Origin: Rebecca billardiae RCC1528
Lineage: Eukaryota; Protista; Haptophyta
Reading direction: 5' to 3'
DNA length: 64,000 nt
Assembly (NCBI GenBank): GCA_965240325.2
Contig: OZ251234.1
Location: 1,116,001-1,180,000, forward strand
Under the pieces are notes generated by a model. It had not been told where the DNA came from, searched no databases, and was given only the letters and a program-made list of their open reading frames with translations. The stretch's first letter is position 1, and every line of letters begins with the position of its first letter. This document shows positions 56,157-59,562 of the stretch, in pieces. A program made the position numbers and the translations under genes.

Positions 56157-59100
56157 TCAGCGCGCCGCTCGCTCGCAGACGTAGTGATAGCCATACACGA
56201 ACGTGCGCGAGCACTGCTCGTCGTACCAGCCGCCGATGAACATGGCGGCGCACCGCGTGGCGAGCGTGAAGCCGAAGCGGCCGAGCAGCGTGTTCGCCTC
56301 GTGGTCGGGCTGGCTGGGCGCCCAGCCCTCGTACGCGCCGCCGCCGCCGCCCGCCTGCCAGCGCCAGCCCGCACTCGGCTCGCCCGTCGGCACCTCGTCC
56401 GCCTGCCTGAGCCCAATCCACACGGGCCGGCTCGCGTCGCCGATCAGGCACTGCACGAAGCGGTCCTCCGCCGCGTCGTCGATGCGCACGAGGTGCGCGC
56501 CCTCGCGCGCGCACGCGCGCGCCGCGCCCTCGAAGTACGCGGGCGTGGCCGGCACGGCGAGGCTGCCCGTGTAAAGATACTCGTGTCCGCGCCACGGCGT
56601 CCAGCCCTCGTGGCCGGCGTCGACGTGCGCGAGCTCGGCGGCGCACGCGGCGCAGTCGGCCTCGGCGGGCACCGCGGCCCACGCGAGCAGGGTGATCACG
56701 CCGACCACGCCGCCGACGGCCGTCGCATACGGCAGCGCGGCGAGCGCGCGCCGGCCCCACGCGCCCCTGGCATCCGTGGAGCCGCGCGCGGCCGCGGCAA
56801 CGCGTCCGCTCGGTTCGGAGCCCGCCTCGTCCGAGCCCGGCTGGATGGTCGCCCGCGGGCGGCGGGGCAGGCACAGCTCGATCGAGGCGCGCGCGTGCAC
56901 GAGGCGCGTCGGGGTGCGGTGCGCCCGCATGCTCACCGGGCGGGACGAAGGGTCTTGCGGCCCGCCGGCGCCGGCGCCGGCCGCGGCGTCGGCGCCCACC
57001 GACGCGTCGGCGCCGGCCGCGGCGTCGGCGCCCACCGACGCGTCGGCGCCGGCCGCGGCGTCGGCGCCGGCCGCCGTCGGCGCGGGCCCTTCCTTCGCAG
57101 CGGCACCCGGGTGCTCGGGGGGCGCCACCGCCGCCTGCTCTTCCACGCTGCGCCGCACGATCGCGGCGCCGTGCGGGCCGAGCACGCTCGTCTCGCGCTC
57201 TGCGGTGCGCACGTGAGTCTCGGAGAGCAGGGCGCGCGCGCGCGCGTTGAACGCGCTCAGCGAGCCGTGCGCGGCCTCGATCGCCGCGCGCAGCCGGTCC
57301 GCGTCCTCGAGCACCGCGCACGTCGCGCTCAGCACGTCGAAGCCGGCGAACGCCGAGACCTGCGCGCCCGGCAGCACGTACATGTCGACCAGGTCGTACA
57401 TGTTGGCTGCGAGCGCGACGCTCTCAACCCGTGAGGCGCCGTGCTCGCTCTCCGCCGCCGCCGCCGCGAGGCCGGCCGCGGTCGAGACGTGGCCGGTGGC
57501 GCGCTCCGACTCCTCCGAGCGGGCGATGAGCTCGGCGCGCGCGGCGGCCGCGCGCGCGGCCGCGGTGTGCATGAAGTCAAAGACCTGATGCGCGCACACG
57601 GGGCGGGCCGCCGCGTGCGCGCGCGGTCGCGCGCGGGCAGGCGCGCGTGGCAGCAGCAACCGCGAGTGAGCCGCGCGCGCGCGAGGCCGCCGGGAGTCCA
57701 GCCGCGCGCGGCCGCGGGGCGGATCCGCGGCCGCGGCGGATCTGCGGCCGCGGCGGGTGCGCGGTGCGCGGTGCGCGGTGCGCGCACGAAGAGCTCGATG
57801 ATGCACCACAGGCGCTCGATATAGGTCGGACCCGCGAGAATCACCAGCCGCCGACAGCCCGCGAGGAACACCGGAAGAAGCGGCAGGTCCATGTCGAGGT
57901 TGGCCTGGTCGAGGCACGCGCGGTCGAACCAGACGAGCGGCTCGCGCATGTGCGTCGCGACGAAGGTCGCGCGCCAGCGGGAGAGGGCCTCCCACTTGGC
58001 CTGGACCGGGTCGTGCCACTGCGCGCGTCGGCGCGCGGCGGGTTGGGCGAAAGGGCGCGGCGCAAAGCGGGGCGGCGCGTGCTGAGCACCGCCGCGCCTC
58101 GGCGCTCGCTCGGCGCACGAAGGCGCGCGCGCGCCCGAGCTCGCGCGCCGCTCACGACTCCGCGCGCGCCCCGGAGCGCACACGACGGGTGGGGCCCCCG
58201 CTCCCACCGTGCCAGCTCTCGCCCGCCCCCGCCACGCGCGCGGCTTGAGGCCGCGCGCCCCGCCTTCCCGCTCGCTCGCTCGCTGCACGCTCCCGAGCAC
58301 CACGCCCGCACCCCGCCGCACACCCCGCCGCACACCCCGCCGCACACCGCGCCGCGCCGCGCACCCCGCCGCGCACCCCGCCGCGCGCCGCGCCGTGCCG
58401 CGCGCACCGAATGCGAAATGAAGGCGTCAACCTCTCCGAGCTGTGCTGGCACGGCGCGCCGCACCCAGTCGCCGCCGTACGCGGCCGCGTCGAACATCGA
58501 GCGGTCGAACTTGTGGCCGGGCAGGGCGCGCAGCCGCGCGCGCCCCTTGTCGATCGCGTCCAGAGGCTCGAACCCCGCGATCAGCGAGGCGATGCCCGCC
58601 GCCGCCTCGACGCCCGCGCCGCGCGTCGCGAGCCACGTGTGCACGCGCGCGCGCACCCACGGGCGGCAGAGGAGGGCCACGCCGAAGAAGTCGACGGCGG
58701 TGGAGATGTCGGCGATGAAGTTGCGCGAGCGGTGGTACGGCGGCGTCTGCAGCGCGTACGCGCCGAAGTAGTACGTGAACAGCACGCCGCACAAGAAATT
58801 GAGCAAGCCAACCGCAAACCAGAGCCGGTCGAGCAGCTGCCGCGGCGTCGGGCCGGGCGGCTTGATGCCGAGGCAGCGGCCGAGGGAGGAGCGCCAGCCG
58901 CGCGCGCCGGGCGGCGCGCCCCCCGGCTCGGCGCGGCGCACGCCCTCCGCGCCCGGATCCGCGCGGGGCGAGCCGTCCGCGTCGCCGCGCCCGATCTGAT
59001 TGAGCATCTCTCCCATCGGCAGCCGCTCGGCGAGCGTGCGGTGCGCGACGCCGCTGAGGATGTAGACCATGGCGCAGAGCGTGCTCAGGATGAGGGAGAG

Positions 59101-59562
59101 GTAGGTGGCGGCGTCGACGTACACGACGCGGCGCGCCGTGCAGTACGGCGCGCGCATCGACGTCTGCAGCACCTCGGAGAGCAGGCCGGAGAGAACGATC
59201 ACAAACAGCAGCAGCCCGCCGTTCCAGAAGACGGACAGGCCGACGATCAGCCGCATGTCCGTCGGGCGCAGCGCCATGAGCAGGAAGGGCACCGCGGAGA
59301 CGCCCATGTGGAAGCCGACGTAGAACAGCGGCGTGCCCCACGGGTTGGTGACGAAGAGGACGAGGCCGATCGAGCAGAACGTCACGCCGATCGCGAGCGG
59401 CGGCCCGGAGACGAGCAATCGGTAGCGCCGGCCGGCGCTGGCCGCGCTGAAGAGCGTGAGCTCGATGCGTCCCAGGTCGAGGTCATCGGCGGCAGTGGGC
59501 TCAAAGGTGGCGGTGGAGCGCAGTCGCTCGCGGCGCGGCGGCCCCCAGAACCGGCTCATCAT
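56157..59562 (-). CDS. 6TM + TIR-like + TM + C-type lectin receptor-like protein (3 exons)
   Basis: Exons 59562-58408, 58018-57788, 57584-56157 in frame. TIR-like DAFISHS|WHD...VWFDRACL...LPVFLAGCRRLVILAGPTYIERLWCIIELF; late TM; CTLD with C..EGAHLVRI, WIGL, WAPSQPD, WYDEQC, YVCE. Confidence 0.85.

What the first reader, a model, noticed from the sequence alone, without database searches (positions are those of the whole stretch)
56157..59562. Lectin-coupled multipass TIR receptor: 6TM-TIR-TM-C-type lectin
Seen: three exons splice in frame into six N-terminal TM segments, a TIR-like domain (FISHS...WFD...GPTY..RLWCIIE; Glu codon 57794-57796), a linker, a seventh TM and a C-type lectin domain with WIGL, QPD and WYD. 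Known: the Glu in the WCxxE helix is catalytic in TIR NADases (SARM1, plant TNLs, bacterial Thoeris), and QPD marks galactose-type Ca-dependent CTLDs. Inference: with an even number of TMs before it, the TIR is cytosolic and the lectin is external. This would be an inverted-topology, glycan-sensing Toll-like analogue that could couple viral, bacterial or partner glycans to NAD+ cleavage in an alga. No single six-frame ORF shows it.
Basis: partly seen in the sequence, partly recalled or inferred. Interest (0 to 1): 0.88.

Follow-up and report, generated by a model that had tools for sequence, protein, structure and literature searches.

The report
Algal membrane TIR protein with lectin
A very GC-rich haptophyte-like alga carries an intact three-exon gene for a seven-helix membrane protein with an immune-type TIR/HET domain on the inside and a C-type lectin domain on the outside: a plausible surface receptor of a large, unstudied algal family, with no activity shown yet.

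Summary
On the minus strand, exons 59562-58408, 58018-57788 and 57584-56157 join in frame through GT..AG introns into a 937-aa protein. A 63%-identical relative on an intron-free 2.9-kb contig reads straight across both junctions and has the same architecture. That architecture is six N-terminal membrane helices, a TIR-like domain, a linker, a seventh helix and a C-type lectin domain.

Two points are weaker. QPD is present, but two other calcium-site positions are replaced and close relatives lack QPD, so galactose binding is doubtful. NAD+ cleavage is inferred only. No RNA data exist for this locus.

Multi-helix membrane TIR genes were already reported in Gephyrocapsa. The lectin fusion also exists among unnamed public proteins. 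This scan found the same architecture twice before on other DNA of this genome. I rate it a new variant of a known kind.

The parts
58408..59562 (-). Exon 1 (aa 1-385): N-terminal tail, six membrane helices, juxtamembrane helix, first strand of the TIR-like domain (..AFISHS)
   Evidence: In-frame translation. tblastn of P0001 ends exactly at 58408. The start region is conserved with an upstream in-frame ATG of L001.
58666..59406 (-). Six-helix membrane region (aa 53-299)
   Evidence: Hydropathy peaks. AF2 model of the orthologous region has pLDDT 83.5 with six long helices. No solved-structure relative was found. dN/dS is about 0.30.
58453..58665 (-). Conserved juxtamembrane segment (aa 300-370) with the family motif ..AAAGIAsLIaG..
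   Evidence: Conserved across 22 family members. KD mean is about 1.0, too low and too short for a membrane span (own calculation from the sequence).
58019..58407 (-). Intron 1 (389 nt, GT..AG), built largely of GC-rich tandem repeats
   Evidence: The relative P0002 reads into an intron at the same codon boundary.
57788..58018 (-). Exon 2 (aa 386-462): core of the TIR/HET-like domain
   Evidence: 78% identity to P0001. All family-conserved residues are kept.
57201..58452 (-). TIR/HET-superfamily domain (aa 371-590, interrupted by both introns and by a variable insert after helix C)
57794..57796 (-). Codon of Glu460 in R-L-W-C-I-I-E (the W-x-x-x-E position of TIR helix C)
   Evidence: Invariant in 84 family members. 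Sub-threshold profile alignments to SIGIRR and TLR2/15 TIR chains put W-C and E in register.
57585..57787 (-). Intron 2 (203 nt, GT..AG)
56157..57584 (-). Exon 3 (aa 463-937 plus stop): C-terminal half of the TIR domain, linker, TM7, lectin domain
   Evidence: Single open frame. P0001 residues 402-833 align along it.
56736..57200 (-). Low-complexity linker (aa 591-745) containing a 36-bp tandem repeat at 56968-57088
   Evidence: 26% identity to the orthologue and dN/dS about 1.1, i.e. unconstrained. TRF result.
56664..56732 (-). Seventh membrane helix (aa 747-769)
   Evidence: KD peak 2.03. Three Arg/Lys lie before it, none after, and acidic residues follow it.
56160..56660 (-). C-type lectin-like domain (aa 771-937) with WIGL (56409-56420), QPD (56304-56312) and WYD (56220-56228)
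   Evidence: Pfam PF00059 at 39.8 bits against a cut-off of 22.6. PDB sequence hits to PLA2R, DEC-205, MRC2, MRC1, CLEC10A and ASGPR lectin domains. QPD aligns with EPN of mannose-receptor CRD4. dN/dS is about 0.46.

Best explanation
This is a real, selectively maintained gene for a seven-helix membrane protein of a large haptophyte family. The family core is a six-helix bundle, a conserved juxtamembrane helix and a cytosolic TIR/HET-superfamily domain. Here the core is extended by a floppy linker, a seventh helix and an external C-type lectin-like domain. The last part therefore has the orientation of an animal type II C-type lectin receptor whose cytoplasmic tail is a TIR domain. Most likely mechanism (inferred, not shown): a ligand on a virus, bacterium, grazer or partner cell binds and clusters the external lectin domains. 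This brings together the TIR domains, which are tethered to the membrane at both ends. The assembled TIRs then use the invariant glutamate to cleave NAD+ or make an ADP-ribose-derived signal, leading to defence or cell death. My odds by step: gene and architecture about 0.9; TIR inside and lectin outside about 0.75; receptor-type function about 0.6; NAD+-cleaving TIR about 0.45; ligand is a galactose-type glycan bound through calcium about 0.2.
For: Gene model: the in-frame GT..AG model is matched by P0001. P0001 is an uninterrupted 833-aa ORF on a 2.9-kb contig with the same domain order, and it breaks on the window exactly at both junctions.
Constraint: dN/dS is 0.15 for the TIR core, 0.30 for the 6TM region and 0.46 for the lectin domain, against 1.1 for the linker.
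Family: 2361 representatives, with W and E invariant. The window keeps 30 of 30 conserved positions. 39 of 84 members touch TIR_2 and 31 of 84 touch HET.
Lectin: PF00059 is above threshold.
Topology: charge counts favour N-in and a cytosolic TIR, and the acidic, seven-cysteine tail favours an external lectin domain.
Recurrent coupling: P0108 is signal peptide, lectin, TM, multi-TM, TIR. P0140 has LRRs in the N-terminal position.
Literature: Gephyrocapsa TIR genes with multiple N-terminal helices respond to virus infection (PMC12489294). An algal TIR makes 3'cADPR and needs its glutamate (bioRxiv 10.64898/2026.04.20.719644).
Against: No RNA run could be listed for this locus, and the one DNA-like holder covered only scraps. 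Expression in this organism is therefore unshown. Neither the window pieces nor P0001 match any Pfam TIR or HET model, even at E<=10. Family profiles do not reach PDB TIR chains significantly. The fold evidence comes from a model of the orthologue, not of the window protein. The lectin calcium site is incomplete, and QPD is absent from the nearest lectin-bearing relatives. Most family members have no ectodomain at all, so the six-helix bundle may itself be the sensor or the effector. That bundle has no known relative. Topology rests on hydropathy and charge only.
Confidence: 0.6

Rival explanations
1. The architecture is as described, but the lectin-like domain is not a calcium-dependent glycan sensor. 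It binds a protein or another ligand, or mediates cell-cell or self/non-self recognition. In that case the gene would work more like a fungal HET allorecognition determinant than a pathogen receptor.
For: Two of the five classical calcium-site positions are substituted in the window and in P0001, and QPD is missing in P0004/P0152, P0005 and P0013. The best PDB matches are PLA2R and DEC-205 type domains, many of which do not bind sugar. 31 of 84 family members touch Pfam HET. Podospora het-B pairs a HET domain with a lectin-fold domain (PMC10890737, listed).
Against: QPD sits at the canonical EPN/QPD position and is conserved between the window and P0001. P0108 has QPD together with Glu and a W-D-D motif. 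Nothing here shows polymorphism or allelic recognition.
Confidence: 0.3
2. The TIR/HET-like domain is a non-enzymatic assembly or adaptor module, as classically assumed for TLR TIRs. Alternatively it regulates the six-helix bundle, which could be a channel or transporter, and does not cleave NAD+.
For: There is no significant sequence match to any proven NADase TIR. The W-C-x-x-E-L motif is also kept in TLR2-type TIRs. The six-helix bundle and the juxtamembrane helix are conserved together with the domain. A paralogue in this window has lost W and E yet keeps an open frame.
Against: The glutamate and tryptophan are invariant in 84 diverse members. The closest structural matches include the enzymatic TIRs RUN1, RPP1, SARM1, AbTir and SPARTA. 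Algal TIRs with this glutamate are active.
Confidence: 0.2
3. The locus is an unexpressed or decaying paralogue, or the three exons are not joined in vivo. Long open frames are cheap in DNA of over 70% G+C.
For: No RNA evidence exists for this locus. Many long overlapping ORFs occur in all frames here. An RNase H-like retroelement ORF abuts the 5' end. At least two further paralogues exist in the genome.
Against: All 30 family-conserved TIR positions are intact. Domain-wise dN/dS is well below 1 while the linker is neutral. The splice sites are canonical and coincide with the break points of an intron-free orthologous ORF. The TIR-lectin junction lies within one exon.
Confidence: 0.07

Closest known systems
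Haptophyte membrane TIR proteins of Gephyrocapsa huxleyi (New Phytol 2025, PMC12489294)
   Same: An N-terminal extracellular region or multiple membrane helices is followed by a cytosolic TIR with the conserved glutamate. The structural similarity is to plant RPS4-type and SARM1 TIRs. The host is a haptophyte.
   Different: That paper reports no additional recognisable domains. Here the TIR is followed by a seventh helix and a C-type lectin domain. I could not test whether those genes belong to this exact sequence family.
Toll-like receptors
   Same: An external ligand-binding domain is coupled through the membrane to a cytosolic TIR-fold domain. The W-C-x-x-E-L register is shared with TLR2/15 (sub-threshold).
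   Different: There is no LRR ectodomain. There are seven membrane helices instead of one. The order is inverted, with the TIR before the last helix and the ectodomain at the C-terminus. This is not a TLR family member.
Animal type II C-type lectin receptors (ASGPR, DC-SIGN, Dectin-1, CLEC10A)
   Same: The order cytoplasmic part, membrane helix, C-terminal lectin domain is shared. Pfam Lectin_C and PDB sequence hits point to these proteins. QPD is present, as in ASGPR and CLEC10A.
   Different: The cytoplasmic part is a whole TIR domain plus a six-helix anchor instead of a short ITAM or internalisation tail. The calcium site is incomplete (Thr for Glu, Tyr for Asn).
Fungal HET domain proteins (PF06985), including Podospora HET-B (HET plus lectin fold)
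   Same: The motifs are similar (..S-H/Y-x-W.., W-x-D-x-x-C-I-x-Q, W-x-x-x-E). 31 of 84 family members touch the HET model. HET is regarded as a distant TIR relative that triggers cell death (PMC10197012, PMC12881547).
   Different: All HET matches are below Pfam's threshold. Fungal HET proteins are mostly soluble or NLR-linked, not seven-helix membrane proteins. HET-B's lectin fold is not a C-type lectin, by my reading of its title and abstract only.
Enzymatic TIRs: plant RUN1/RPS4/RPP1, SARM1, bacterial AbTir, Thoeris ThsB, SPARTA
   Different: Sequence identity is 8-18%. A disordered insert of about 35-50 residues follows helix C. No activity data exist.

Membership tests
TIR domain superfamily (fold level) | Flavodoxin-like alpha/beta fold with five parallel strands A-E alternating with helices | tested here: met
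TIR domain superfamily (Pfam TIR PF01582 / TIR_2 PF13676) | Sequence match to a Pfam TIR model at its gathering score | tested here: not met
   No TIR model hit was found for the window exons (E<=1) or for P0001 (E<=10). Among 84 family members, 39 match TIR_2 at E<=0.1 (best 1.5e-6) and 2 match TIR. The one member I scored singly reached 18 bits against a cut-off of 28.
Enzymatic (NADase) TIRs | Catalytic glutamate in helix C (W-x-x-x-E) | tested here: met
   R-L-W-C-I-I-E at aa 454-460. W and E are invariant in 84 members. Glu460 corresponds to model residue 95 in helix 90-110, directly after strand C. Its register matches W-C..E of TLR2/15 in sub-threshold alignments. No residue-level superposition on SARM1 E642 or RUN1 E100 could be made.
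Enzymatic (NADase) TIRs | NAD+ cleavage or cyclic ADPR-isomer production | not testable with these tools
   This needs a biochemical assay of wild type against a Glu460 mutant.
HET domain (PF06985) | Sequence match at Pfam's gathering score | tested here: not met
   No hit was found for the window pieces or P0001. 31 of 84 members match at E<=0.1, best 5.7e-4. P0108 scores 17.2 bits against a cut-off of 22.5.
C-type lectin-like domain (PF00059) | Pfam match above the gathering score, with WIGL and the conserved cysteine framework | tested here: met
   39.8 bits against 22.6. PDB sequence hits to PLA2R, MRC2, MRC1, CLEC10A and ASGPR. WIGL is at aa 851-854. Cysteines lie at 820, 907, 920 and 932, plus 773, 776 and 841.
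Calcium-dependent, galactose-type carbohydrate-recognition domains | Complete calcium site 2: Q-P-D, a Glu two residues before the third Cys, and Asn-Asp of W-N-D | tested here: not met
   QPD is present and aligned with EPN of mannose-receptor CRD4. The position before Cys907 reads A-T-R-C (Thr for Glu), and WND reads WYD (WHD in P0001). Relatives P0004/P0152, P0005 and P0013 lack QPD. Which positions are ligands is taken from established CTLD knowledge, not from a tool.
Toll-like receptors | N-terminal LRR ectodomain, single membrane helix, C-terminal TIR | tested here: not met
   There is no LRR match. There are seven hydrophobic helices, and the TIR lies before the last one.
Haptophyte 6TM-TIR/HET family (unnamed; this work and PMC12489294) | Six-helix N-terminal bundle, the ..AAAGIAxLIGG.. 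juxtamembrane helix, then the S-H-S-W / W-x-D-K-x-C-I-D-Q / R-L-W-C-x-x-E domain | tested here: met
   Alignments A1-A4. The window keeps 30 of 30 positions conserved at 90% or more. 37 of 151 retrieved proteins also match the membrane region.
Receptor topology (TIR cytosolic, lectin external) | Even number of spans before the TIR with the N-terminus inside, and one span between TIR and lectin | tested here: inconclusive
   Within the loops and 15-residue flanks, I count about 13 Arg/Lys on the predicted cytosolic side and about 5 on the outside. TM7 has 3 before it and 0 after. The model shows six long helices. No dedicated topology predictor or experiment was available.

The most novel reading that the evidence does not exclude
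Haptophytes possess a class of pattern-recognition receptors in which an external C-type lectin domain (or, in relatives, an LRR or other ectodomain) is wired directly to a cytosolic, catalytically active TIR held between a six-helix bundle and a seventh helix. Ligand-driven clustering at the cell surface would then be converted, within a single polypeptide, into NAD+-derived signalling or abortive cell death against giant viruses. This would be a lectin receptor and TIR enzyme hybrid with no counterpart in animals or plants.
Probability: 0.3. Interest if true: 0.75.

Novelty: new variant of a known kind. Interest (0 to 1): 0.5.

Why it matters
Haptophyte blooms are ended by giant viruses, and how these algae sense attackers is largely unknown. 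TIR genes with N-terminal membrane helices were recently tied to the virus response of Gephyrocapsa, but no ligand-binding part was recognised. A family member that carries a bona fide C-type lectin ectodomain offers a concrete handle. The lectin domain can be expressed alone to fish for ligands. The invariant glutamate gives a clean loss-of-function control. Together these make the question 'do algae have surface receptors that signal through TIR enzymes?' directly testable. The family also bridges TIR_2 and fungal HET at the sequence level, which bears on the open question of what HET domains do.

Tried and rejected
1. RNA support for this locus. The look-up of sequencing runs found no RNA holder. 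The single run that was listed gave four short contig scraps and no joints, which is uninformative.
2. Direct Pfam and PDB sequence matches for the TIR-like part. Nothing was found for exon 2, for P0001:300-520, or for the whole-module profile. The core profile gave only sub-threshold SIGIRR and TLR2/15 hits.
4. Viral homologues. A scan of IMG/VR with the two family motifs gave no confirmed relative.
5. I considered the conserved ..GIASLIAG.. helix as a possible extra membrane span, which would flip the topology. I rejected it as too short and too weakly hydrophobic (about 13 residues, KD mean about 1.0), but this is not proof.
6. I considered reading the finding as two adjacent genes. I rejected this because the TIR C-terminal half and the lectin domain share one exon and one orthologous ORF.
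7. The spliced window protein has no reference, so I did not submit it to the remote tools. The TIR and 6TM folds were predicted on the orthologue P0001 instead.
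Full report
**1.

On the minus strand, the segments 59562-58408, 58018-57788 and 57584-56157 are each a multiple of three. They are bounded by GT..AG and join into a 937-codon frame ending in TGA. Both introns (389 and 203 nt) would shift the frame if retained. Hydropathy shows six peaks between aa 53 and 299 and one at aa 747-769.

Exon 3 carries the C-terminal half of the TIR-like domain, the linker, the seventh helix and the lectin domain together. 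The TIR-lectin fusion therefore does not depend on splicing.

**2. Independent support for the gene model**

A word-indexed search with exon 1 found P0001. It is 833 aa as called and 63% identical over the aligned part.
- It lies as one uninterrupted ORF on a 2.9-kb JGI contig, L001.
- That ORF reads ..AFISHS-WHDP.. and ..MELF-VFDY.. straight across both predicted junctions.
- It has the same order of parts, ending in a Pfam Lectin_C match.
- tblastn of P0001 on the window gives three pieces that break at 58408, 58018, about 57788 and 57584.
- An in-frame ATG 55 codons upstream in L001 gives an N-terminus resembling the window's, which supports the start at 59562.

I take L001 to be a transcript assembly. 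This is my inference, because it has no introns and an AT-rich tail. A second relative, P0002, reads into an intron directly after ..AFVSHS, so that intron position is shared. No RNA run could be listed for the locus itself, and the only run that was listed gave scraps. Expression in this organism is not shown.

**3. Selection**

Codon-wise comparison with L001 gives these dN/dS values:
- TIR core: about 0.15
- Six-helix region: about 0.30
- Lectin domain: about 0.46
- Linker: about 1.1

dS is high (0.6-1.2), so the values are rough. The contrast between domains and linker is nevertheless clear. This matters because long open frames arise easily in DNA of over 70% G+C.

**4. The TIR-like domain**

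*Direct sequence searches fail.* No Pfam TIR or HET hit was found for exon 2 or for P0001:300-520, and nothing in PDB sequences.

*The domain belongs to a very large family.* An exhaustive search found 2361 representatives at E<=0.001 and 1534 at E<=1e-10.
- The consensus is ..DAF-SHSWHD..KW..W-DK-CIDQ..LPVFLAGC..G-TY--RLWC--ELF.
- The window keeps all 30 positions that are at least 90% conserved.
- Of 84 members scanned on their own, 39 match TIR_2 (best 1.5e-6) and 31 match HET (best 5.7e-4) at E<=0.1.
- The family therefore sits between the two models, as expected if HET is a distant TIR relative (PMC10197012 and PMC12881547).

*The fold is TIR.*
- An AlphaFold2 model of P0001:305-550 with this alignment is confident, with pLDDT 82 and a core above 90. 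It has five strands and an unstructured insert after helix C.
- Its 50 best Foldseek matches in the PDB are all TIR or SEFIR domains: SNC1 at 2e-4, then RPS4, RUN1, L6, RPP1, AbTir, SPARTA and SARM1.

*The glutamate.* It lies four residues after the invariant tryptophan, early in helix C (helix C spans model residues 90-110; the Glu is residue 95). A core profile aligns, below threshold, to SIGIRR and TLR2/15 TIR chains with W-C and E in register. I could not superpose residues on SARM1 E642 or RUN1 E100.

In short, the fold and the motif are met. Pfam-level membership and activity are not.

**5. The lectin domain**

PF00059 scores 39.8 bits against a cut-off of 22.6. PDB sequence hits are to PLA2R, DEC-205, MRC2, MRC1, CLEC10A and ASGPR domains. 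QPD aligns with EPN of mannose-receptor CRD4.

The rest of the classical calcium site 2 is not there. The residue two before Cys907 is Thr, not Glu. W-N-D is W-Y-D here and W-H-D in P0001. The nearest lectin-bearing relatives (P0004/P0152 of Pavlovales sp. CCMP2436, P0005, P0013) lack QPD or the whole long loop. Which positions ligate calcium is established knowledge of the family, not a tool result. I therefore rate calcium-dependent galactose binding as doubtful, at about 0.2.

**6. Topology**

The orthologous N-terminal region models as six long helices at pLDDT 83.5. Arg/Lys counts favour N-terminus-in. I count about 13 on the predicted cytosolic side against about 5 outside, from the loops and flanks. 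The seventh helix has three basic residues before it and none after, followed by acidic residues and seven cysteines. That fits a cytosolic TIR and an external lectin domain. The conserved ..GIASLIAG.. helix after TM6 is too short and too weakly hydrophobic to be a span, but this is not proven. No dedicated predictor was available.

**7. Family context**

The named closest relatives are hypothetical proteins of Pavlovales sp. CCMP2436 and Diacronema lutheri. The Atlas clusters are haptophyte. Most members are 450-550 aa with only the six-helix bundle and the TIR/HET domain.

Accessory domains vary:
- Lectin_C in 5 of 50 full-length members scanned.
- An Atlas cluster in which 22% of members carry Lectin_C, and another cluster with HNOB.
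- P0108 has a signal peptide and an N-terminal lectin domain before the helices.
- P0140 has N-terminal LRRs.
- A paralogue in this very window (37338-40993) has an inosine-uridine nucleoside hydrolase domain and a degenerate TIR lacking W and E.

The lectin domain is found on either side of the core. This indicates that lectin and TIR were coupled more than once. The six-helix bundle has no detectable relative among solved structures. No viral relative was found.

**8. Mechanism**

Shown: the gene structure, the domain folds, the conservation and the likely sidedness.

Inferred: the lectin domain binds an external ligand, and clustering brings the doubly tethered TIR domains together. The TIRs then cleave NAD+ or produce a nucleotide signal through Glu460, as in plant, SARM1, bacterial and green-algal TIRs.

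Alternatives: a non-glycan or self-recognition ligand, a non-enzymatic TIR, or a role of the six-helix bundle as sensor or effector.

**9. Novelty**

Multi-helix N-terminal TIR proteins with the conserved glutamate, induced early in virus infection, were described in Gephyrocapsa huxleyi. No extra domains were recognised there (PMC12489294). I found no paper describing the 6TM-TIR-TM-lectin arrangement. It does exist in unnamed public proteins. This scan has already reported it twice on other DNA of the same genome (s1-371892 and s1-367709).

Verdict: a real and well-supported gene, a new variant of a known kind, of moderate interest.

Noticed in passing
window 37338-40993, minus strand: A paralogue of the same 6TM-TIR core. 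Its upstream ORF (40115-40993) matches Pfam IU_nuc_hydro at 39.9 bits against a cut-off of 34.2. Its TIR-like part keeps only 13 of 30 family-conserved positions and has lost both the W and the E of W-x-x-x-E. A nucleoside hydrolase joined to a TIR-type module hints at nucleotide-signal metabolism.
   Followed up: partly
window 59691-61985, plus strand: A 764-aa ORF abutting the 5' end of the gene, with an RNase H match just under Pfam's cut-off (25.4 against 25.8 bits) and a proline/glutamine-rich tail. It is probably a retroelement remnant.
   Followed up: partly
window 56968-57088 and 58293-58405: A 36-bp tandem repeat (3.4 copies) encodes the Ala/Gly/Asp-rich part of the linker. Intron 1 is largely built of GC-rich 12-41-bp tandem repeats. 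Both are likely to vary in length between strains.
   Followed up: no
P0108 (734 aa, 14 near-identical members from ENA, Logan and JGI) and P0140 (901 aa): Relatives with other arrangements. P0108 is signal peptide, C-type lectin, TM, multi-TM, TIR/HET, with a more canonical QPD, E-E-C and W-D-D site. P0140 has N-terminal leucine-rich repeats before the helices and the TIR-like domain, which is a Toll-like layout.
   Followed up: partly
ESM Atlas clusters: A haptophyte cluster of 774-aa proteins joins a heme NO-binding (HNOB) domain to the same TIR/HET-like fold (TM 0.63 by query). This suggests the module is also coupled to gas or small-molecule sensing.
   Followed up: no
window about 36600-36800: An ORF translation shows a long Tyr-Ile repeat, which is what a TA dinucleotide microsatellite would give, just downstream of the stop codon of the paralogue's gene.
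   Followed up: no
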